Source: Pristiophorus japonicus (lineage: Eukaryota). From it: DNA of 64,000 nt. Positions 33,121 to 57,628 of the stretch are shown piece by piece. Location: positions 317,068,001 through 317,132,000 of the forward strand of contig NC_091979.1 in NCBI RefSeq assembly GCF_044704955.1, in the 5' to 3' direction. Both the position numbers and the translations under genes were made by a program. The notes beneath the pieces are model-generated. The model searched no databases. It saw only the letters and a list, made by a program, of their open reading frames with translations, and was not told where the DNA came from. Position 1 is the stretch's first letter, and every line of letters begins with the position of its first letter.

Positions 33121-34464
33121 CAAATTAGGCGTCCAGAACGAGGTGGGGGGGGAGGGGGAGGGAAGGGAAGTCATTAAATTCTATAATAAATCTTTATTTA
33201 TACTTATACAAATATTAAACAAATAAATCCAACCTGAATAAACATTTATAAGCAAAGAAAAGATTAAATAAACCATCTTCCTACCTGTGTGAAAGTGCTT
33301 CAGGCAGGCCTTTCGGGACCGAAGGCTGAACGGGCCGGCCCGAGACTTCAGGCAGGGCCCGTCCCCAGCACCAGATTTACAGGTAGGTGGCGTTGGGTCG
33401 GGGAGGTTCGGTTCGGTTCGGGTCGGGTCGGGGGGAGGGAGGGAGGGAGAGAGAGCGGGGGGGGGGAGGGAGGGAGAGAGAGGGGGGGGGTAGGGAGGGA
33501 GGGAGAGAGAGGGGGGCAGGGAGAGAGAGAGAGTGGGGAGGGGGGGAGAGAGAGGGGGGAGGGTGAGAGAGANNNNNNNNNNNNNNNNNNNNNNNNNNNN
33601 NNNNNNNNNNNNNNNNNNNNNNNNNNNNNNNNNNNNNNNNNNNNNNNNNNNNNNNNNNNNNNNNNNNNNNNNNNNNNNNNNNNNNNNNNNNNNNNNNNNN
33701 NNNNNNNNNNNNNNNNNNNNNNNNNNNNNNNNNNNNNNNNNNNNNNNNNNNNNNNNNNNNNNNNNNNNNNNNNNNNNNNNNNNNNGAGAGGTCAGGTCGG
33801 GGAGGGGGAGGTCAGGTCGGATCCAGTCTGGGGGCGGGGGGGGGAGCGGGAGTCGAGTCGTGTCAGATCGGGTCGGGTCGAGTCGGGGTGGGGGGGCGGG
33901 GAGCGGGAGCAGGAGCGCGGGTCGGGTCCAGTCGGCGGGGGGCGGAGCGGGAGCGGGAGCGGGAGTCCGGTCGGGTTGGGGGGGGGGGGGGGGTGGGAGT
34001 CGAGTCGGGGGGGGTCCAGTCGGAGGGTGGGGGGGGTCAGGTTGGGGGGCGGGAGTCGGGTCGGGTCGGGTCCAGTCGGGGGTGGGGGGGAACAGGAGCG
34101 CGGGTCGGATCGGGTCGGGTCCGGTCGGGGGGTGGGGGAAGCAGGAGCTGGCCGGGGGAGGAGCCTTATTCACGCAGACCCAGTGAGGCCATTCGGCCAG
34201 GGCTAGGGGATGCTTGCTTCGGGCGCCTGGAGCTACTGCACTTGCGTGCCCACTATAGCGCGCATGTGCAGAGGTCCCGGCACTGTTTTCAGCGCAGGGA
34301 CCTGGCTCCGCCCCCCCACAGCTCGTGCTGCGCTGCGCGAGGGCCAGAGGACCTGCAGGGAGGTGGAGAATACCGAGGATTTTTTTAGGCGCACTTTGTG
34401 GCGCGAAAAACGGGCGTCCAGGTCGGGACTGCGCCGTTCTAGGCGTGTGTGGAAACTTAGGCCC
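33121..34464. mobile_element. GC-rich non-autonomous element with low-complexity G-rich interior
   Basis: TIR-like right end GGAAACTTAGGCCC. The left end is missing. Confidence 0.5.
33573..33785. other. Assembly gap (213 N)
   Basis: N run inside G-rich low-complexity sequence. Confidence 1.
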
Positions 34465-47672: not shown

Positions 47673-48773
47673 AACATAAGAACATAAGAAATAGGAGCAG
47701 GAGTAGGCCACCTGGCCCCATGAACCTGCTCCGCCATTTAATATTAAGGCTGATCTGATAATGGACTCAGCTCCACATCCCTGACCGCTCCCCATAACTC
47801 CTTGTTCCCTTATCGCTCAAAAATCTGTATATCTCCTCCTTAAATATATTCAATGACCCAGCCTCCACAGTGCTCTGGGGCAGAGAATTCCATAGATTTA
47901 CAACCCTCTGAGAGAAGAAATTCCTCCTCAACTCAGTTTTAAATGGGTGGCCCCTTATTCTGAGACTATGTGCCCTAGTTTTAGTTTCCCCGATGAGTGG
48001 AAATATCCTTTCTGCATCCACCTTGTCAAGCCCCCTCATTATCTTATTTTTCGATAAGATACCTCTCATTCTTCTGAACTCCAATGAGTATTGGCCCAAC
48101 TTACTCAACCTACCTCCATAAGTCAACCCCCTCAACTGCGGAATCAACCAAGTGAACCTTCTCTGAACAGCCTCCAATGCAAGTATATCCTTTCTTAAAT
48201 ATGGAAGCCAAAATTGTACGCAGTACTCGATAGGTTGGCCTCACCAATATCCTGTACAGTTGTAGCAGGACTTTGCTGCTTTTATACTCTATCCCCCTTG
48301 CAATAAAGGCCAACATTCCATTTGCCTTCCTGATTACTTGCATACTAACTTTGTGTGTTTCATGCACAAGGACCCCCAGTTCCCTCTGTACAGCAGCACT
48401 TTGCAATTTTTTTTCATTTAAATTATAATTTGCTTTTCTATTTTTTCTGCCAAAGTGGATAACCTCACATTTTCCCACATTATACTATATCTGCCAAATG
48501 TTTGCCCACTCACTTAGCCTGTCTATATCCCTTTGCAGATTTTTTGTGTCCTCCTCACTATTTGCTTTCCCACCCATCTTTGTATCATCAGCAAACTTGG
48601 CTACATTACACTCGGTCCCTTCATCCAAGTCATTAATATAGATTGTAAATACTTGAGGCCGCAGCAACGATCCCTGCGGCACCCCACTCGTCACTGTTTG
48701 CCAACCAGAAAATGACCCATTTATCCCGACTCTCTGTTTTTGTTCGTCAGCCAATCCTCTATCCATGCCAACA
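47673..48773 (-). mobile_element. 5'-truncated CR1 in IFIT
   Basis: (ACATAAGA)n tail, GVPQGS and FADDT. Confidence 0.92.
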
Positions 48774-48774
48774 T

Positions 48775-51380
48775 GCTAGTTGGATCCAAAATTGGTTCAG
48801 CGGTAAGAAGCAAAGGGTAATGGTAAATGGATGTTTTTGTGACTGGAAGGATGTTTCCAGTGGGGTCCGCAGGGCTCAGTACTGGGTTTCTTGCTTTTTG
48901 TGGTATACATCAATGATCTAGATTTGATTATCGGGAGTATGATTAAGAAGTTTGCAGGTGACACCAAAATTGGCTGTGTGGTCGTTAATGAAGCAGAAAG
49001 TCATGGACTGCAGGAGGATATCAATCTAATGGTCAGGTGGGCAGAGCAGTGGCAAATGGAATTTAATTTGGATAAGTATGAGGTAATGCACTTTGAGAGG
49101 GCTAATAAGGAAAGGGTATACACATTAACCGGTAAAAGTGTAGATGAATAAAGGGATCTTGGAGTGCTTGTCCACAGATCCCTGAAAGTAGCAGGCCAGG
49201 TGGATAAGGTGGTGAAGAAGGCATACGGAATGGTTGCCTTTCTTGGCTGAGGCACATAATACAAGAGCAGGGAGGTTATGCTTAAAATGTATAATACTTT
49301 GGTTAGGCCACAGCTGGAGTACTGCGTGCAGTTCTGGTCGCCATATTATAGAAAGGACGTGATTGCAATAGAGAGGGTGCAGAGGACATTTGCTAGGATG
49401 CTGCCTGGAATGGAGAAACTTAGCTATGAGGATAGAAACATAGAAACATAGAAAATAGATGCAGGATCAGGCCATTCAGCCCTTCTCGCCTGCACCATCA
49501 TTCAATCAGTTCATGGCTGAACATGAAACTTCAGTACCCCCTTCCTGCTTTCTCGCCATACCCCTTGATCCCCCGAGTAGTAAGGACTTCATCTAACTCC
49601 CTTTTGAATATATTTAGTGAATTGGCCTCAACTACTTTCTGTGGTAGAGAATTCCACAGGTTCACCACTCTCTGGGTGAAGAAGTTTCTCCTCATCTCGG
49701 TCCTAAATGGCTTACCCCTTATCCTTAGACTGTGACTTCCCCAACATTGGGAACATTCTTCCTGCATCTAACCTGTCTAAACCCGTCAGAATTTTAAACG
49801 TTTCTATGAGGTCCCCTCTCATTCTTCTGAACTCCAGTGAATACAAGCCCAGTTGATCCAGTCTTTCTTGATAGGTCAGTCCCACCATCCCGGGAATCAG
49901 TCTGGTGAATCTTCGCTGCACTCTCTCAATAGCAAGAATGTCCTTCCTCAAGTTAGGAGACCAAAACTGTACACAATACTCCAGGTGTGGCCTCACCAAG
50001 GCCCTGTACAACTGTAGCAACACCTCCCAGCCCCTGTACTCAAATCCCCTCGCTATGAAGGCCAACATGCCATTTGCTTTCTTAACCGCCTGCTGTACCT
50101 GCATGCCAACCTTCAATGACTGATGTACCATGACACCCAGGTCTCGTTGCACCTTCCCTTTTACTAATCTGTCACCATTCAGATAATAGTCTGTCTCTCT
50201 GTCTTTACCACCAAAGTGGATAACCTCACATTTATCCACATTATACTTCATCTGCCATTCATTTGCCCACTCACCTAACCTATCCAAGTCACTCTGCAGC
50301 CTCATAGCATCCTCCTCGCAGCTCACACTGCCACCCAACTTAGTGTCATCCGCAAATTTGGAGATACTACATTTAATCCCCTCATCTAAATCATTAATGT
50401 ACAATGTAAACAGCTGGGGCCCCAGCACAGAACCTTGTGGTACCCCACTAGTCACTGCCTGCCATTCTGAAAAGTACCCATTTACTCCTACTCTTTGCTT
50501 CCTGTCTGACAACCAGTTCTCAATCCACGTCAGCACACTACCCCCAATCCCATGTGCTTTAACTTTGCACATTAATCTCTTGTGTGGGACCTTGTCGAAA
50601 GCCTTCTGAAAGTCCAAATATACCACATCATTGGATAGGCTGTGTTTGTTCTCATTGGAACAGAGGATGTTGAGAGGAGACCTCATTGAGGTGTCCAAAA
50701 TTTTGAGGGGTCTGGATATAGTGGATAGCAAGGACCTATTTCCCTTGGTGGTGGGTTCAATTATGAGGGGGCATAGTTTTAAGGTGGTTGGTGGAAGGTT
50801 CAGAGGGGATTTGAGGGGTGGCTTTTTCAAGCAGAGGGTTGTGGGGGTCTGGAACTTAGGGCCTGGAAGGGTGGTGGATGTAGAAACCCTCAACACATTT
50901 AAAAGGTGCTTGGATGGACACTTGAAGTGCCATAATCTGCAGGGTTACATGGACCTAAAGCTGGTAAGTGGGATTAGACTGGATAACCTGTTGTTGGCAG
51001 GCACAGCTATGATGGTAAGTACTGCAGCAAATCGAATATATCCAGGGTGATCTGGACGAGTTTCGATTACCTGGATGGGTTGGAGAGGAATGTTCCGAGA
51101 TATTTTTTCCCCAATTGACCTGGGTTTTTATCTGTTTTTTGCCTTTCCCAGGAGATCACATGGCTCCGGTTGGGGAGGAGTGTAGAATGTTTCGGTGCAA
51201 GGGGTGTCGCAGTTGTGTGGGGCAGACTGGTTGGGCTGGGTGCTCTTTACCTTTCTGCCATTGTTCATTGTTCATACGTTTATATGTAACTTTCAGGGCT
51301 GCTGACTGAGGGCCGTATGTTTCTTTGTCGGCCGGTGTGGACACGATGGGCCGAAATGGCCTCCTTCTGCGTTGTAGATT
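48775..51380 (+). mobile_element. 5'-truncated CR1 of a different subfamily in IFIT, itself interrupted by the CR1 at 49432-50629
   Basis: WIQNW..KKQRVMVNG, FAGDTK, and LSYE..LDRL contiguous across the insertion. 3' end GGGCCGAAATGGCCTCC. Confidence 0.9.
49432..50629 (-). mobile_element. 5'-truncated young CR1
   Basis: (ATAGAAAC)n tail. RT is near-identical to the copy at 13148-15634. Confidence 0.95.
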
Positions 51381-52688
51381 TGCAATTGTGCAAAAATAAA
51401 TGATGGCTTCTGCTCAAATGCCTTTTCAAAATAGTACTTGCATTGATTGATCAACTCAGCTTTCTGTTGAAAAGCAGGATTGCGAGGGGCTTTGCTGCCT
51501 GGATATTTGATCAGTTGAAATATTTTTTTTCTGCAACACTGACCTATTTGGTGGTGTATGAAGGTAGAGTTTGGAGTAATTTTTAATGCTTTCTTCAACA
51601 GCTCCACAGCTTTTTCCACATCTCCTTCTCTTCTGTAAAATTTTGCTGCATAACGAGTTACATATGGAAGATCAGGGGACTTCTGCAATGCTTGTTCAAC
51701 TAATTCGTGTTCTTCCACCTTTTGATTGAACTCTTGTAGTTTTAGAGCCAACATGGCTACAGAGTCATCTGGATCAAGTTCCAGCACACGTCACAACTGC
51801 TTCACTGATTGGCTGCAGTCACCACTCTCTGGGGTACCAGAAAACCCTTCCAGACAGAACAAAACAGTCGCATAGCCAACGTTCCATTCAGTGTCATCAG
51901 GATCTTCCTCCAGAGTCTTCTCAAAACATTCCTTTGCCTCTTCATAGTATTGACAAGGAGAATTCAACAGTGACCAACCCTTCTCCCCGTATACTTCAGG
52001 TATCAGTGCTGTATACTGAGAGCCATCAGTAAATTATTTACAGATCATCTCCAGCTTGTCGAGGTAGGACTGGGCCTCTGTCAGTTGGCCCATGTGATAA
52101 TATACCCAGGCATAGTTTCCATAGGTGATGATGCTTCTTCTTTCAAATTCATGTTCATGGTTCTCCCTCAGAATCTTTTCAGCTTCCTTTAAGTTTTGAA
52201 TTGCCCCTTTGAATTGCCTTGCTGACAGTTTACAAATGCGAGGTGGTTGTCAGACCTGGCCTGATATTTCACACGAGCCTGTATTAAATCTTGTAATCTA
52301 TACTTCATGTCGTCCAAGTCAATGCTGTCTCTCTGTGGGCCCCACGTGAAGTGACATTGAAGCTGGCCAAGTTTTGCTTTCAAGCAATCATTCAGTGTGT
52401 TGCTGTAAGAGAACAAAATAATCAAAGCCCATCTTATGTGTATCTAACTTACATTTTTAGCTCATATATAATCAACATAGCAATGCTGGTAAAGTCAGAA
52501 TAGCAGAACAGATGAGCAGGTCAGTGCACATGGGCCCGGAACACCTCCCTGCAGCCTCACTGCCTGGCATCCCTCAGTTCGGGGGAAACCCATTGGAATC
52601 CCGTAATGGTCCCGGAGGCAACAACAAATGAACAATTGGCTCATGAGTGCCAGCAGAAATCCACGATCATCCATTAGTATGATCATAG

Positions 52689-53048: not shown

Positions 53049-53593
53049 ACTGGGGAAAGAGGGCTCGGGGAATGGGAGACTGGGGAATGGGGGCTCGGGG
53101 AGAGGGAGACTGGGGAATGGGGGCTCGGGGAGAGGGAGACTGGGGAATGGGGGCTCGGGGAGAGGGAGACTGGGGAATGGGGGCTTGGGGAGAGTGAGAA
53201 TGGGGAATGGAGGCTTGGGGAGAGGGAGACTGGGGAATGGGAGCTCGGGGAGAGGGAGACTGGGGAATGGGGGCTCGGGGAGAGGGAGACTGGGAAATGG
53301 GGGCTTGGGGAGAGGGAAACTGGGGAATGGGGGCTCGGGGAGAGGGAGACTGGGGAATGAAGGCTTGGGGAGAGGGAAACTGGGGAATGGGGGCTCAGGG
53401 AGAGGGAGACTGGGGAATGGGAGCTCGGGGAGAGGGAGACTGGGGAATGGGGGCTCAGGGAGAAAGAGATTGGGGAATGGGGGCTCGGGGAGAGGAAGAC
53501 TGGGGAATGGGGCCTCGGGGAGATGGAGACTGGGGAATGGGGGCTCGGGGAGAGGGGGAATGGGGGCTCGGGAGAGAGAGACTGGGGAATGGG
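53049..53593. repeat. G-rich 30-bp minisatellite, left array, about 18 copies
   Basis: Unit GGGGGCTCGGGGAGAGGGAGACTGGGGAAT. Confidence 0.97.
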
Positions 53594-53751
53594 TCAGGGG
53601 GGATCATGGTGAGGCCAGGCGGGAGGTAGAAGAGGCCAGGTTGAGTGTAATTTATTCTGTGGGGGCCTGGAAGAGCTGGACTGATCCCTGGGCTCCAGAC
53701 AAGGTCACTGGGCCTCTCCAGCCCTGGCCTTCTCTCACACACCACAGCAAC

Positions 53752-53932
53752 TCCCTTCAGCCCCCTCCCAGCAGATCCTTTCAGTCCCTTCCCTGCAGAT
53801 CCCTTCAGCCCCCTCCCAGCCGATCCCTTCAGCCCCCTCCCAGCAGATCCCTTCAGCCCCCTCCGAACAGATCCATTCAGCCCCCTCCCAGCAGATCCCT
53901 TCAGCCCCCTCGCAGCAGATCCCTTGAACCCC
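53752..53932. repeat. C-rich 24-bp tandem repeat, about 7.5 copies
   Basis: Unit CCCTTCAGCCCCCTCCCAGCAGAT. Confidence 0.93.
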
Positions 53933-54052
53933 TCAGGAGATCGAGCTGCCGGGGGTGGGCAGAGCTTTCGGGGGGTTGGGAGTCGGGAAGTTGGGTTTGG
54001 ATGGTGGTGGGAGAACTCGGGACCGGGAGAGGCGGGGATTATCTTTAACCTA

Positions 54053-54096
54053 CCCGGCAACTGATGATGCAGCTCGCAGTATTTGTCTGATTGGAT
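54053..54096 (+). promoter_or_regulatory. MHC-type X1/X2-Y promoter module (RFX / CREB-ATF / NF-Y)
   Basis: CCCGGCAACTGATG (X1) overlaps TGATGATGC (X2-like), then a 20-bp spacer, then CTGATTGGAT (Y). This matches the motifs and 19-20 bp X-Y spacing of vertebrate MHC promoters. No S box at the canonical distance. Confidence 0.7.
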
Positions 54097-54279
54097 AGTT
54101 CAATGTTTGGAAAGTTTATTTCGGCACCAACACAAACTCTCCCCGTGTCTTTTCTTCCCGGAGCCTATTGACTCACAGCCTGTTTTTATTGTAATTGGAG
54201 ACAAATATACCCTCGAACCAATCGAACCGGAGGAGTCTGAGTGTAAAACACTCTGCACTGGGCAAAGCGCAAGAACAGA

Positions 54280-55358
54280 CAGCACAGGGCACAGAGACAG
54301 TCCCAGAGACACAGTATCAGCACAGGGCACCGAGACAGTCCCAGAGACACAGTATCAGCACAGGGCACAGAGAGACAGTCCCAGAGACACAGTATCAGCA
54401 CAGGGCACAGAGACAGTCCCAGAGACACAGTATCAGCACAGGGCACCGAGACAGTCCCAGAGACACAGTATCAGCACAGGGCACAGAGAGACAGTCCCAG
54501 AGACACAGTATCAGCACAGGGCACAGAGACAGTCCCAGAGACACAGTATCAGCACAGGGCACCAAGACAGTCCCGGAGACACAGTATCAGCATAGGGCAC
54601 AGAGAGACAGTCCCAGAGACACAGTATCAGCACAGGGCACAGAGAGACAGTCCCAGAGACACAGTATCAGCACAGGGCACAGAGAGACAGTCCCAGAGAC
54701 ACAGTATCAGCACAGGGCACAGAGAGACAGTCCCAGAGACACAGTATCAGCACAGGGCACAGAGAGACAGTCCCAGGGACACAGTATCAGCACTGGGCAC
54801 AGAGAGACAGTCCCAGAGACACAGTATCAGCACAGGGCACCGAGAGACAGTCTCAGAGACACAGTATCAGCACAGGGCACAGAGACAGTCCCAGAGACAC
54901 AGTATCAGCACAGGGCACAGAGACAGTCCCAGAGACACAGTATCAGCACTGGGCACAGAGAGACAGTCCCAGAGACACAGTATCGGCACAGGGCACAGAG
55001 AGACAGTCCCAGGGACACAGTATCAGCACTGGGCACAGAGAGACAGTCCCAGGGACACAGTATCAGCACAGGGCACAGAGAGACAGTCCCAGAGACACAG
55101 TATCAGCACAGGGCACAGAGAGACAGTCCCAGGGACACAGTATCAGCACTGGGCACAGAGAGACAGTCCCAGAGACACAGTATCAGCACTGGGCACAGAG
55201 AGACAGTCCCAGAGACACAGTATCAGCACTGGGCACAGAGAGACAGTCCCAGAGACACAGTATCAGCACTGGGCACAGAGAGACAGTCCCAGAGACACAG
55301 TATCAGCACAGGGCACAGAGAGACAGTCCCAGAGACACAGTATCGGCACAGGGCACAG
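54280..55358. repeat. 38/40-bp minisatellite, about 27 copies
   Basis: Unit AGCACAGGGCACAGAG(AG)ACAGTCCCAGAGACACAGTATC. Confidence 0.97.
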
Positions 55359-55454
55359 GAATCACACGGTCTGAATTGGGCGCAGCTCACGGACGGTCTC
55401 TCGGAAAAGGATTGCCTGCAAACCGCTCATTCCAGCCTGTCGAGGGAAGTAACA

Positions 55455-56522
55455 ATGTTTGGACTGACCGTGCTGGCCCTTCTGTGTGGAGAGGTGTGTG
55501 CAGGCTCTCACTCCCTACGGTACATGCACACGGCTATCACTCCGCTCCCGGGCATTGCTGAGTTCACCGATGTGGGTTATGTGGATGACCAGCAGTTTAT
55601 TTACTATGACAGTGTGAGCCGCCAGTACACCCCGCGGCAGCGGTGGATCAGGGAGAGCGAGGGCGCCGAGTACTGGGAGCGCTACACACAGATCCTGCGG
55701 GGCAAGGAGCAGGTGATGAAAGGCAACATTCAGACCGTCTTAACCCGCACCAACCAGACCGGCGGGATCCACACGCTGCAGAGGTTGTGCGGCTGTGAGC
55801 TGCGGGATGACGGCACCACCAGCGGCTTCTGGCAGTACGGCTGGGACGGGAAGGACCTGATCAGCTTCGACAAGGATCGCCTGGTGTGGGTCACCCCGGT
55901 ACCGTGGGGAGAGATCACCAAGAACAAGTGGGACCAGGACAGGGCCGAAATGCAGCAGGACAAAAGTTACCTGGAGCAGGAGTGCATCGAGTGGCTGAAG
56001 AAATACCTGAAGGCTGGAGAGAGAGAACTGGGAGCTGTTGCTCCTCAAGTGTTTCCTTCTGTGGACAAGGCGTCGAATATTAAAGCCCCCCAACTCTCCT
56101 GTCTCCTCACAGGTTTTTACCCTCGCGAAATCCAAGTGACCCTCCTGAGAAATGGCGAGCCAATCAGGGACACGGAATCCACGGGCATCCTGCCCAACCA
56201 CGATGGCACCTACCAGCTCACGACATGGGCTCAGATCGAGCCCGCGGATGGAGCCACCTATTCCTGTCAGTATGAGCAGAGCGGCCAAGCAGGAGGGAAG
56301 ACCCGAGACTGGGACGGGACGTTCCGAGTGACTCCAGGATCGCCAGAGGGAACAAATAGGGGTTTGATTGTTGGAATTGTGATTGCTGCCGTCGCCCTGA
56401 TTGCTCTTGTGATCGGTGCGGTTGTGTGGAAGAGGAGAGGAGGAGAGGAGACATCTGGTTACAGCCCAGCGAACCCTGCTGAACGAGGAGAATTATCCCC
56501 AAACTCACCAGCCCAAGCCTGA
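55455..56522 (+). CDS. MHC class I heavy chain, shark classical UAA-like, intronless, 355 aa
   Basis: ACAATG start and 16-aa leader. Alpha1 GSHSLRY..VGYVDD..EYW..NQT, alpha2 HTLQ..GC..WDGKD..TKNKW..YLEQECIEWLKKYL, Ig-C1 alpha3 C..TGFYP..PNHDGTYQ..YSC, then TM and a cytoplasmic GYSPA tail. Uninterrupted ORF. Confidence 0.95.
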   Translation: MFGLTVLALLCGEVCAGSHSLRYMHTAITPLPGIAEFTDVGYVDDQQFIYYDSVSRQYTPRQRWIRESEGAEYWERYTQILRGKEQVMKGNIQTVLTRTNQTGGIHTLQRLCGCELRDDGTTSGFWQYGWDGKDLISFDKDRLVWVTPVPWGEITKNKWDQDRAEMQQDKSYLEQECIEWLKKYLKAGERELGAVAPQVFPSVDKASNIKAPQLSCLLTGFYPREIQVTLLRNGEPIRDTESTGILPNHDGTYQLTTWAQIEPADGATYSCQYEQSGQAGGKTRDWDGTFRVTPGSPEGTNRGLIVGIVIAAVALIALVIGAVVWKRRGGEETSGYSPANPAERGELSPNSPAQA

Positions 56523-56773
56523 GGCTGGTCCCGAAGTGAAGTTCACTGGGACTAGAATCTGGACTTGCTGTGTCGCAAGGAGGGTTCATTCAGAAGCAAT
56601 CCACGATTCTGCATCTTCATTTCGTTTGATTGTCACTGGCTGCTGCCAGTGTTAATAGTAATCGGTAACGTATCTATCATTGAGTGGGTTTGGGGATATT
56701 TTCTTTTTGGTGATTGGATAGAAATCTCCAGTTGGGTCTTTTGGTGTTTAATGTAAATGAGATATGTCTAATT

Positions 56774-56834
56774 CGGCACGGGCTGGATGGCCAAATGGTC
56801 GTCTTCCGTGCTGCAACCATTCTATGATTCTATG
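56774..56834 (+). mobile_element. CR1 3'-terminal fragment with (ATTCTATG)2 tail ending the class I 3' region
   Basis: GGCACGGGCTGGATGGCCAAATGGTCGTCTTCCGTGCTGCAACCATTCTATGATTCTATG resembles the other CR1 3' ends in the window. Confidence 0.8.
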
Positions 56835-56847
56835 TATGGTGGCCGGA

Positions 56848-57628
56848 GGAGAGGGAGACTGGGAATGGGGGCTGGGGGAGAGAGGGAGACTGGGAATGGG
56901 GGCTTGGGGAGAGAGAGACTGGGGAATGGGGGCTCAGGGAGAGGGAGACTGGGGAATGGGGGCTCGTGGAGAGGGAGACTGGGGAATGGGGGGTGGGGGA
57001 GAGGGAGACTGGGGAATGGGGGCTCGGGGAGAGAGGGAGAGACTGGGGAATGGGGGCTTGGGAAGAGGGAGACTGGGAATGGGGGCTCCGGGCGAGGGAG
57101 ACTGGGGAATGGGGGCTTGGGGAGAGTGGGAGACTGAGGAATGGGAGCTTGGGGAGAGGGAGACTGGGGAATGGGGGTTCAGGGAGACGGTGACTGGGGA
57201 ATGGGGGCTCAGGGAGCGGGAGACTGGCGAATGGGGGCTTGGGGACTGGGAGACTTGGGAATGGGGGCTCGGGGAGAGAGAGACTGGGGAATGAGGGCTT
57301 GGGGAGAGGGAGACTTGGGAATGGGGCCTCGGGGAGAGAGAGACTGGGGAATGGGGGCTCGGGGAGCGGGAGACTGGGGAATGAGGGCTTGGGGAGAGGG
57401 AGACTTGGGAATGGGGCCTCGTGGAGAGAGAGACTGGGGAATGGGGGCTCGGGGAGAGAGGGAGACTGGGGAATGGGGGCTCTGGGAGAGGGAGACTGGG
57501 GAATGGGGGATTGGGGACTGGGAGACTTGGGAATGGGGGCTCGGGGAGATAGAGACTGGGGAATGGGGGCTCGGGGAGAGAGAGACTGGGGAATGGGGGC
57601 TCGGGGAGAGGGAGACTGGGGAATGGGG
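56848..57628. repeat. G-rich 30-bp minisatellite, right array, about 26 copies
   Basis: Same unit and orientation as 53049-53593, but more heterogeneous. Confidence 0.97.

What the first reader, a model, noticed from the sequence alone, without database searches (positions are those of the whole stretch)
54020..54240. Correctly spaced MHC X-X2-Y promoter module upstream of a processed gene
Seen: CCCGGCAACTGATG-ATGC..., 20 bp, then CTGATTGG. Nearby are a GC box (54031), TGACTCA (about 54169), near-GAS TTCCCGGAG (about 54155) and a second CCAAT (about 54218). Known: the X-Y module with 19-20 bp spacing is the RFX/CREB/NF-Y platform used by CIITA and NLRC5, and this X box is close to the class II DRB-type ACCAGCAACTGATG. 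Retrocopies do not normally carry promoters. Inference: either a cDNA replaced the exons of a native MHC locus (intron loss in place) or the copy was captured by another MHC-type promoter. Either way it could be regulated like an antigen-presentation gene.
Basis: partly seen in the sequence, partly recalled or inferred. Interest (0 to 1): 0.8.

Follow-up and report, generated by a model that had tools for sequence, protein, structure and literature searches.

The report
Doubled MHC promoter on intronless shark gene
Upstream of an intron-free MHC class I gene of the Japanese sawshark lie two tandem copies of the X-X2-Y control module that switches on antigen-presentation genes in mammals, so the gene most likely kept a class I promoter instead of arriving as a bare retrocopy; whether this promoter is the one used is not yet shown.

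Summary
At 54053-54094 an X1 box, an X2-like heptamer and a Y box lie on the sense strand, 1.36 kb upstream of the only MHC gene in the window. That gene is a single-exon class I ORF at 55455-56522.

- **Match to mouse:** against mouse SXY sequences printed in PMC4374748, the X1/X2 core is 14/14 identical to H2-Eb1. The X-Y geometry is identical to H2-K (CCGG +0, TGA +11, ATTGG +36).
- **Chance:** the H2-K geometry pattern occurs only at these two sites in the window (0.005 expected).
- **Layout downstream:** a CCAAT box, a TATA-like element, then a 1.08-kb 40-bp array. No ATG occurs from 54103 to the start codon. This reads as a class I proximal promoter with a minisatellite expanded in the 5'UTR.

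There is no intact ISRE, kappaB or GAS site, and the S box is uncertain. The TSS is unmapped. One contig bridges the leader unspliced, but an annotated sister copy uses an upstream 5' exon (52606-52676), which would make the modules intronic.

First readers flagged the same module at seven sister copies on other DNA of this genome. A follow-up found a 104-bp doubled SXY at a working class I promoter.

The parts
54020..54024 (+). S-like pentamer GGACC, candidate S box of module 1. It lies 34 bp upstream of the CCGG of X1.
   Evidence: It aligns at shift 104 with GCACC of module 2. It is 11 bp farther from X than GGACC is in mouse H2-Eb1 (hand count).
54031..54037 (+). GC box GGCGGGG. It overlaps a degenerate kappaB-like GGGGATTATC at 54034-54043.
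   Evidence: GGGRNNYYCC is not met.
54053..54066 (+). Module 1 X1 box CCCGGCAACTGATG (RFX half-site GGCAAC).
   Evidence: GCAACTGATGATGC is 14/14 identical to the mouse H2-Eb1 X1/X2.
54065..54071 (+). Module 1 X2-like heptamer TGATGCA, with TGA at +11 from CCGG.
   Evidence: It is identical to the H2-Eb1 X2 position. It is not a canonical CRE.
54087..54094 (+). Module 1 Y box CTGATTGG (inverted CCAAT, NF-Y site), with ATTGG at +36.
54113..54123 (+). ISRE-like relic AGTTTATTTCG abutting GCACC. It resembles the H2-K ISRE-GCACC junction but is one base short.
   Evidence: and by-eye comparison with the H2-K primer. No consensus ISRE was found.
54124..54128 (+). S-like pentamer GCACC, candidate S box of module 2.
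54157..54168 (+). Module 2 X1' box CCCGGAGCCTAT.
   Evidence: 23/42 identity to module 1 without gaps. Shift 104 is the best self-alignment shift.
54169..54175 (+). Module 2 X2' TGACTCA (AP-1/TRE consensus) at +11 from CCGG.
54192..54198 (+). Module 2 Y' box TAATTGG, with ATTGG at +36.
54218..54224 (+). Forward CCAAT box CCAATCG, 24 bp after Y'.
54242..54249 (+). TATA-like TGTAAAAC. The predicted TSS is about 54250-54300, which is 50-100 bp after Y'.
   Evidence: The 50-100 bp rule for the S-Y module to TSS distance comes from PMC2677874. This is inference, not mapped.
54280..55358 (+). 40-bp minisatellite, 27 copies at 95% identity. It is the inferred expansion inside the 5'UTR and contains no ATG, TAA or TGA.
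   Evidence: Contigs lie on its last units.
55359..55454 (+). Unique proximal leader. It contains the splice acceptor ttccag|C at 55430-55435/55436.
   Evidence: A contig covers 55385-55576 with 0 differences and bridges the acceptor unspliced. The leader translation recurs in the N-termini of sister proteins P0002 and P0003.
55455..56522 (+). Single-exon MHC class I ORF, 355 aa.
   Evidence: Pfam MHC_I 8e-53 plus C1-set. PDB 6lup shark class I, 5e-94. The exact protein is in UniRef for Pristiophorus japonicus.
52606..52676 (+). Alternative upstream 5' exon (MVPEATTNEQLAHECQQKSTIIH plus TA) with donor GTATGA at 52677. TATATAA lies at 52465-52471.
   Evidence: the translation is identical to residues 1-23 of the annotated sister protein P0006. 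TA + C(55436) gives the Y that follows.

Best explanation
Window 54010-54280 is a class I-type proximal promoter that travels with the intronless gene.

**Anatomy.** It holds two tandem X1-X2-Y enhanceosome modules 104 bp apart:
- M1: CCGG 54054, TGA 54065, ATTGG 54090.
- M2: CCGG 54158, TGA 54169, ATTGG 54194.

A forward CCAAT box (54218) and a TATA-like element (54242) follow.

**Inferred mechanism.**
- RFX binds X1.
- A CREB/ATF or AP-1 type bZIP factor binds X2.
- NF-Y binds Y.
- The platform recruits NLRC5 or CIITA, clears nucleosomes and sets a TSS about 50-100 bp after the second Y box (about 54250-54300).

The mRNA would then carry an ATG-free leader of about 1.2 kb. Most of that leader is a 40-bp minisatellite that expanded inside an originally short 5'UTR. 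Translation would start at 55455.

**Origin (inferred).** The promoter came by DNA continuity from an intron-bearing class I gene. The coding introns were lost through a cDNA, by conversion or recombination, rather than by insertion of a bare retrocopy. The whole cassette was then duplicated several times in an IFIT-rich region.

**Regulatory input.** No ISRE, kappaB or GAS site is intact. Regulation would therefore run through the enhanceosome arm only.
For: - **Motif identity and geometry against an independent published reference:** 14/14 for X1/X2 and 8/8 for Y versus mouse H2-Eb1. Offsets are identical to H2-K.
- **Specificity:** the H2-K geometry pattern occurs only twice in 128 kb of searched strand, both here, 104 bp apart, on the sense strand upstream of the only MHC gene. 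The shuffle mean is 0.005. Shift 104 is the best self-alignment shift, 30/61 against 24 or fewer for other shifts.
- **ATG-free stretch:** no ATG occurs from 54103 to 55455, the longest ATG-free stretch of the window. Leaving the array out, 272 nt lack ATG where about 5 are expected, P about 0.006.
- **CpG:** o/e is 0.73 in the promoter and 0.96 in the leader, against 0.44 for the window and 0.07-0.43 in the flanking arrays.
- **Unspliced leader:** a contig of a public run lies on 55385-55576 with no difference and bridges the acceptor and the ATG unspliced. Other contigs lie on the last array units. Two annotated sister proteins start at an ATG inside the unspliced leader.
- **Age:** the lineage is 74% identical to the nearest other sawshark class I protein. 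It is therefore not a fresh copy of that annotated gene, yet both modules keep the geometry.
- **TSS distance rule:** S-Y modules lie 50-100 bp upstream of the TSS (PMC2677874).
- **Scan notes (unchecked):** a working class I promoter in this genome is doubled with the same 104-bp period. Sister copies carry the same module, and one has a 4.9-kb ATG-free array.
Against: - The TSS is not mapped. The one reads call could not include 53930-54280, because the 1.08-kb array between it and the gene is a long repeat that the tool forbids.
- The two runs are contigs of unrecorded kind. I take them for RNA only because depth on conserved class I segments relative to the CR1 tail differs about 50-fold between the runs, and the tool warns against reading depth.
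- An annotated sister copy (P0006) splices an upstream exon, identical to window 52606-52676, onto the acceptor at 55436. For that isoform the modules are intronic.
- The S box is not at the canonical 16 bp. The S-like pentamers are 11 bp farther out than in H2-Eb1.
- Neither X2 is a canonical CRE.
- No ISRE, kappaB or GAS site is intact.
- The sister copies are 99% identical, so their sharing the module shows co-duplication, not selection.
- Homology to the parental promoter rests on an unchecked note.
Confidence: 0.55

Rival explanations
1. The modules are genuine by descent but are not the working promoter. Transcription starts at an upstream TATA-type promoter near 52.47 kb. A 5' exon ending at 52676 is spliced to the acceptor at 55436. 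The doubled X-Y region lies in intron 1, as an inert relic or at most an intronic enhancer.
For: - The annotated sister protein P0006 begins with 23 residues identical to the translation of window 52606-52674. The next residue, Y, is explained by TA(52675-6) + C(55436).
- There is a donor GTATGA at 52677, an acceptor ttccag at 55430-55435 and a TATATAA at 52465.
- Distal S-Y-like enhancers are known in class II loci (PMC2677874).
Against: - The contig on 55385-55576 bridges the acceptor unspliced. No joint or loose end was reported at 55436.
- Two other annotated sister proteins start inside the unspliced leader.
- The window's own annotated product is the 355-aa form, although the upstream exon is intact here.
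- The N-terminal extension would bury the signal peptide.
- The ATG-free leader and the CCAAT and TATA-like layout after module 2 are left unexplained.
Confidence: 0.25
2. The intronless copy was captured by a foreign MHC-type promoter, for example one from a class II beta gene, rather than keeping a class I promoter.
For: The module 1 X1/X2 is identical over 14 bases to the class II beta (H2-Eb1) X box and lacks the class I-type TGACGCG X2. There is no intact ISRE or kappaB site.
Against: - The X-Y offset equals H2-K (+36), not H2-Eb1 (+35).
- Module 2 has a class I-like X1 (CCGGAG...) and a TGAC-type X2.
- The ISRE-like relic abuts GCACC as in H2-K.
- The CCAAT and TATA-like order is that of class I promoters.
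- An unchecked scan note gives the same 104-bp doubling for a working class I promoter.
- No class II exon is in the window.
Confidence: 0.1
3. The motif combination is a chance match in repeat-rich DNA and has no relation to MHC regulation.
For: Single short motifs are common. CTGATTGG occurs 8 times and CCNRGCAAC 4 times in the window.
Against: - The combined a priori patterns are unique to this site.
- There is 14/14 plus 8/8 identity to a published mouse module at conserved spacing.
- Two modules share identical geometry.
- The strand and position relative to the only MHC gene are correct.
Confidence: 0.02

Closest known systems
Mouse H2-K class I SXY module (NLRC5 target; PMC4374748)
   Same: - The offsets are identical: CCGG +0, TGA of X2 +11, ATTGG of Y +36, in both window modules.
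- Module 2 shares the CCGGA start of X1 and a TGAC-type X2.
- An ISRE-like element abuts GCACC upstream of module 2, as in the H2-K primer sequence.
   Different: - The module is doubled, with a 104-bp period.
- The ISRE is one base short and does not meet the consensus.
- There is no kappaB enhancer A.
- A class I-type S box could not be recognised.
- X2 is TGATGCA or TGACTCA instead of TGACGCG.
- A 1.08-kb minisatellite separates the promoter from the ATG.
Mouse H2-Eb1 (class II beta) SXY module (CIITA target; PMC4374748)
   Same: The X1/X2 core GCAACTGATGATGC is identical over 14 bases, and the Y octamer CTGATTGG is identical. A GGACC S-like pentamer lies upstream.
   Different: - X-Y spacing is one base longer here.
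- The S-like pentamer is 11 bp farther from X.
- The gene driven is class I.
- There are two modules.
Doubled SXY promoter of a working sawshark class I gene (scan note s1-879240, unchecked)
   Same: Two tandem modules 104 bp apart with H2-K spacing, in the same genome.
   Different: That promoter is reported to have an ISRE and to serve an intron-bearing gene. The sequences could not be compared here.
Retrogenes that gain promoters or 5' exons after insertion
   Same: The coding region has no introns. An upstream non-homologous 5' exon is spliced onto an acceptor just before the ATG in one annotated sister copy.
   Different: This gene carries a family-specific (MHC-type) promoter directly upstream, which points to inheritance rather than recruitment. 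It has no poly(A) tail, and the 3' end runs into a CR1-like tail.

Membership tests
MHC S-X1-X2-Y (SXY) enhanceosome module | X1 box: RFX half-site of the RGYAAC type in the MHC X-box context | tested here: met
   Module 1 has CCCGGCAACTGATG. GCAACTGATGATGC is 14/14 identical to mouse H2-Eb1. Module 2's X1' CCCGGAGCCTAT lacks GCAAC but resembles the H2-K X1 start CCGGAC.
MHC S-X1-X2-Y (SXY) enhanceosome module | X2 box: CRE/TRE-like heptamer abutting X1 | tested here: inconclusive
   TGA sits at +11 in both modules, as in H2-K and H2-Eb1 (hand count). TGATGCA equals the H2-Eb1 position. TGACTCA is an AP-1 consensus. Neither is a canonical CRE.
MHC S-X1-X2-Y (SXY) enhanceosome module | Y box: inverted CCAAT (CTGATTGG) | tested here: met
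   CTGATTGG at 54087-54094 and TAATTGG at 54192-54198.
MHC S-X1-X2-Y (SXY) enhanceosome module | Tightly constrained X-Y spacing (20-22 bp in NLRC5 modules; PMC4374748) | tested here: met
   ATTGG lies at +36 from CCGG in both modules. This equals H2-K and is +1 relative to H2-Eb1.
MHC S-X1-X2-Y (SXY) enhanceosome module | S box about 16 bp upstream of X (it determines NLRC5 versus CIITA specificity) | tested here: inconclusive
   The canonical position in module 1 holds a GC box (54031-54037). GGACC and GCACC pentamers lie 34 bp before each CCGG, which is 11 bp farther than in H2-Eb1. The class I S consensus is available only as a figure, so it could not be scored.
MHC S-X1-X2-Y (SXY) enhanceosome module | Position 50-100 bp upstream of the TSS of an MHC or related gene | tested here: inconclusive
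   The site is on the sense strand upstream of the only MHC gene. The TSS is not mapped. A contig bridges the leader unspliced, and contigs lie on the array end. The module is 1.26-1.36 kb from the ATG.
MHC S-X1-X2-Y (SXY) enhanceosome module | Occupancy by RFX, CREB and NF-Y, and dependence on CIITA or NLRC5 | not testable with these tools
   Needs ChIP, EMSA or reporter assays in shark cells.
Mammalian-type class I proximal promoter (enhancer A, ISRE, SXY, CCAAT, TATA) | Intact kappaB enhancer A and ISRE upstream of SXY | tested here: not met
   There is no GGGRNNYYCC and no GAAANNGAAA(C) in 53590-55460, and no ISRE in the whole window. Only relics remain: GGGGATTATC and AGTTTATTTCG.
Mammalian-type class I proximal promoter (enhancer A, ISRE, SXY, CCAAT, TATA) | CCAAT box and TATA-like element between the Y box and the TSS | tested here: met
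   CCAATCG at 54218 and TGTAAAAC at 54242. The TATA-like match is weak, and there is no TATAWA.
LINE-mediated processed retrocopy | No introns, a poly(A) tail, target-site duplications, and no parental promoter | tested here: not met
   The coding part has no introns. However, there is no poly(A) tail and no AATAAA. An MHC-type promoter is present. The flanks are 30-bp arrays, not short duplications. The 3' end runs into a CR1-like ATTCTATG tail.

The most novel reading that the evidence does not exclude
A shark class I gene lost all coding introns at once through a cDNA while keeping its native, doubled X-X2-Y promoter. It then multiplied as a single-exon, NLRC5/CIITA-responsive family inside an IFIT region. 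On this reading the base-exact X-X2-Y geometry dates to the common ancestor of sharks and mammals. Tandem doubling would be a shark way of strengthening the enhanceosome input in promoters that have lost direct IRF and NF-kappaB sites.
Probability: 0.3. Interest if true: 0.65.

Novelty: new variant of a known kind. Interest (0 to 1): 0.5.

Why it matters
The SXY enhanceosome is the central switch of antigen presentation in mammals. Its role in fish is doubted: salmon data point to IRF1 instead (PMC7573153). I found no paper in the searched library that describes it in cartilaginous fish.

A shark promoter with a mouse-identical X box and base-exact H2-K spacing, present twice in tandem, argues that the platform's geometry was fixed before sharks and bony vertebrates split.

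For the intronless gene family, the presence of this promoter changes the origin story. It points to cDNA-mediated intron loss on a promoter-bearing gene rather than simple retroposition. It also gives concrete, mutable sites for testing whether shark NLRC5 or CIITA drives these genes.

Tried and rejected
- **Earlier scan findings searched by sequence.** Blank.
- **GAS, ISRE, kappaB and canonical TATA scans of 53590-55460, and an ISRE scan of the whole window.** None found. The idea that the region is the IFIT neighbour's interferon promoter is therefore rejected.
- **Bacterial-type promoter/terminator scan.** Irrelevant and empty.
- **Similarity of the unique promoter, leader and 3'UTR to the rest of the window.** No other copy, so the region is not a dispersed repeat within 64 kb.
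- **Reads.** The single read-laying run was put on 55280-56835, beside the long 40-bp array that the tool forbids. It therefore could not show 5' ends at 54200-54300.
- **Upstream ORF 54083-54592 as an exact look-up.** Not in the protein collection.
- **The 775-aa ORF that runs from 54195 through the array into the gene.** Rejected as a composition artefact. The T-poor unit has no TAA, TGA or ATG.
- **Literature.** Searches for shark MHC promoters or intronless shark class I genes found nothing specific.
- **Spliced model.** The model with the upstream exon was checked exon by exon against P0006.

Full report
**What is there**

The window comes from a shark. The exact 355-aa product of the ORF at 55455-56522 is a UniRef entry of Pristiophorus japonicus (Japanese sawshark). 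It belongs to a cluster of six proteins that are 99-100% identical.
- The ORF is a complete MHC class I heavy chain on one exon: Pfam MHC_I 8e-53 plus C1-set.
- Its best solved relative is the shark class I structure 6lup, 5e-94.
- No other class I exon lies in the 64 kb.

The layout around the gene is as follows:

| Coordinates | Feature |
|---|---|
| 53049-53593 | 30-bp G-rich array |
| 53594-53744 | short unique stretch |
| 53745-53932 | 24-bp array |
| 53933-54279 | 347 unique bases, which hold the finding |
| 54280-55358 | 40-bp array, 27 copies, 95% alike |
| 55359-55454 | 96 unique bases |
| 55455-56522 | the ORF |
| 56523-56835 | 3'UTR that ends in a CR1-like ATTCTATG tail, with no poly(A) tail and no AATAAA |
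| 56836-57628 | the same 30-bp array again |

**Check of the observation**

- X1 CCCGGCAACTGATG at 54053-54066.
- TGATGCA at 54065-54071.
- Y box CTGATTGG at 54087-54094, 20 bases after X1.
- GC box at 54031, TGACTCA at 54169, TTCCCGGAG at 54155 and CCAAT at 54218.

The strict pattern is unique, and none of 100 shuffles contains it. That pattern was read off the sequence, so I used two independent yardsticks.
- **A loose a priori pattern.** RFX half-site RGYAAC, 26-30 nt, then ATTGG occurs once on both strands of the window, and that hit is this site.
- **A published reference.** PMC4374748 prints the primers that rebuild the mouse H2-K and H2-Eb1 SXY regions.
  - Aligned primer by primer, the window shares 14 consecutive bases (GCAACTGATGATGC) with the H2-Eb1 X1/X2.
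  - It also shares the whole Y octamer, with one extra base in between.
  - Counted on the H2-K primers, CCGG is at 0, the TGA of X2 at +11 and ATTGG at +36. The window has exactly these offsets.

**A second module**

The H2-K geometry written as CCGG-N7-TGA-N22-ATTGG hits twice in the window, at 54054 and 54158, and nowhere else on either strand. Block shuffles give a mean of 0.005.
- The second module (54157-54198) is 23/42 identical to the first without gaps.
- A shift of 104 is the best self-alignment of the region, 30/61 against at most 24 for any other shift.
- S-like pentamers (GGACC 54020, GCACC 54124) sit 34 bases before each CCGG and align with each other. They are 11 bases farther from X than GGACC is in H2-Eb1. 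The canonical S position of module 1 holds the GC box, so S remains open.

**What surrounds the modules**

- *Upstream of module 2:* AGTTTATTTCG abuts GCACC (54113-54128). By eye this resembles the H2-K ISRE-GCACC junction but is one base short. No consensus ISRE, kappaB or GAS site exists in 53590-55460, and no ISRE exists in the whole window.
- *After module 2:* a forward CCAATCG (54218), TGTAAAAC (54242), and then the 40-bp array.

PMC2677874 states that S-Y modules lie 50-100 bp upstream of the TSS. That places a predicted TSS at about 54250-54300, at the edge of the array.

The stretch from 54103 to the start codon contains no ATG. It is the longest ATG-free gap in the window.
- The array unit lacks ATG by composition.
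- The 272 non-array bases also lack ATG where about 5 are expected, P about 0.006.

CpG o/e is 0.73 in the unique promoter and 0.96 in the proximal leader. The window average is 0.44, and the arrays are at 0.07-0.43.

Together this reads as a class I proximal promoter with a minisatellite expanded inside the 5'UTR.

**Transcript evidence**

One search found two public runs of one study, kept as contigs, kind not on record. The tool forbids a stretch with a long repeat, so I laid them on 55280-56835, beside the array.
- In X1, contigs lie on 55694-55979, 55971-56285 and 56272-56831 with 0-1 differences.
- In X2, a 192-base contig lies on 55385-55576 with no difference. It bridges the acceptor at 55435/6 and the ATG unspliced.
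- In both runs, short contigs lie on the last array units (55280-55344).
- No joints were reported.

I take the runs for RNA. Depth on conserved class I segments relative to the CR1 tail differs about 50-fold between the two runs, which DNA copy number cannot do. The tool warns against reading depth, so this is an inference. If it holds, transcripts of this copy or its twins reach upstream into the array. That excludes a TSS in the last 70 bases before the ATG and fits a TSS at or before the array. It does not map the TSS.

**A complication**

Three of the six annotated sister proteins have longer N-termini.
- P0002 and P0003 start at an ATG inside the unspliced leader. Their extension LLTDGLSEKDCLQTAHPSLSREVT matches the window's leader translation except for one residue.
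- P0006 starts with MVPEATTNEQLAHECQQKSTIIH. This is identical to the translation of window 52606-52674.
  - TA at 52675-6 plus C at 55436 gives the next residue, Y.
  - A donor GTATGA follows at 52677, and TATATAA lies at 52465.

I checked this model exon by exon and built no joined sequence. For that isoform the modules lie in intron 1. This is the main rival reading. The unspliced contig, the two unspliced annotated models and the 355-aa annotation of the window's own copy speak for the contiguous leader as the commoner form.

**Origin**

The gene is not a simple processed retrocopy.
- It has no poly(A) tail.
- It has no short target duplications.
- It carries a family-specific promoter.

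The nearest other sawshark class I protein (P0010) is only 74% identical, and Squalus class I is 73%. The lineage is therefore not a fresh copy of that annotated gene, yet both modules keep exact geometry.

Earlier notes of this scan, which I could not check on sequence, add three points:
- A working class I promoter on another piece of the genome has two SXY modules 104 bp apart with H2-K spacing plus an ISRE.
- The same X-Y module precedes sister copies at about -0.45, +0.82, +1.35, +1.49, +1.99 and +2.2 Mb.
- One copy has a 4.9-kb ATG-free array.

The identical 104-bp period is the strongest lead that this promoter descends from a class I promoter. I therefore favour loss of the coding introns through a cDNA on a promoter-bearing gene, followed by segmental duplication. 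I rank this above capture by a foreign promoter, although the module 1 X box is of the class II beta type.

**Limits**

- The mouse primer sequences used were copied from the paper text returned.

**Verdict**

- The module is almost certainly a true X1-X2-Y element (about 0.9).
- That it is the working promoter of this gene is likely but unproven (about 0.55).
- It is a variant of a known system: doubled, without intact ISRE or kappaB sites, attached to a single-exon class I gene, and separated from the ATG by an expandable minisatellite.

Noticed in passing
window 52606-52676 (+), with TATATAA at 52465-52471: A small exon with donor GTATGA whose translation equals the first 23 residues of the annotated sister protein P0006. 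It would splice to the acceptor 19 bases before the class I ATG. It lies antisense within what was intron 1 of the neighbouring IFIT pseudogene.
   Followed up: partly
window 55466-55495: A low-depth contig in run X1 matches about 30 bases of the leader-peptide coding part. After 55495 it runs on for 189 unlike bases, beginning (with the last matching GT) like a splice donor. This may be an intron-bearing paralogue whose exon 1 ends at 55493, which is 10 bases before the usual leader/alpha1 junction.
   Followed up: no
window 55748-55851, 55956-56111, 56216-56319: Very deep short contigs match only these conserved class I segments. They have loose ends at 55966 and 55971. They probably come from highly expressed classical class I mRNAs, or from the MITE-borne class I fragment noted elsewhere in the scan.
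   Followed up: no
window 54195-56522: A 775-aa ORF runs in frame from the promoter through the whole 40-bp array into the class I gene. The T-poor unit has no TAA, TGA or ATG in any frame, so this is a composition effect. Gene callers could be misled by it.
   Followed up: yes
window 51293-52425 (-), 47767-50896 (-): IFIT-like ORF pieces (CHFTW motif at 52189-52425, TPR-like 51293-51787) have a strong acceptor at about 52402 on the minus strand. They are broken by a LINE reverse-transcriptase ORF. No ISRE is found anywhere in the window, so the IFIT promoter is absent or decayed.
   Followed up: partly
window 53049-53593 and 56836-57628: The same G-rich 30-bp minisatellite brackets the whole promoter-gene cassette in direct orientation. 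The second array starts directly after a CR1-like ATTCTATG tail.
   Followed up: partly
window 33573-33785: An assembly gap (213 N) inside extremely G-rich low-complexity DNA. It was left untouched.
   Followed up: no
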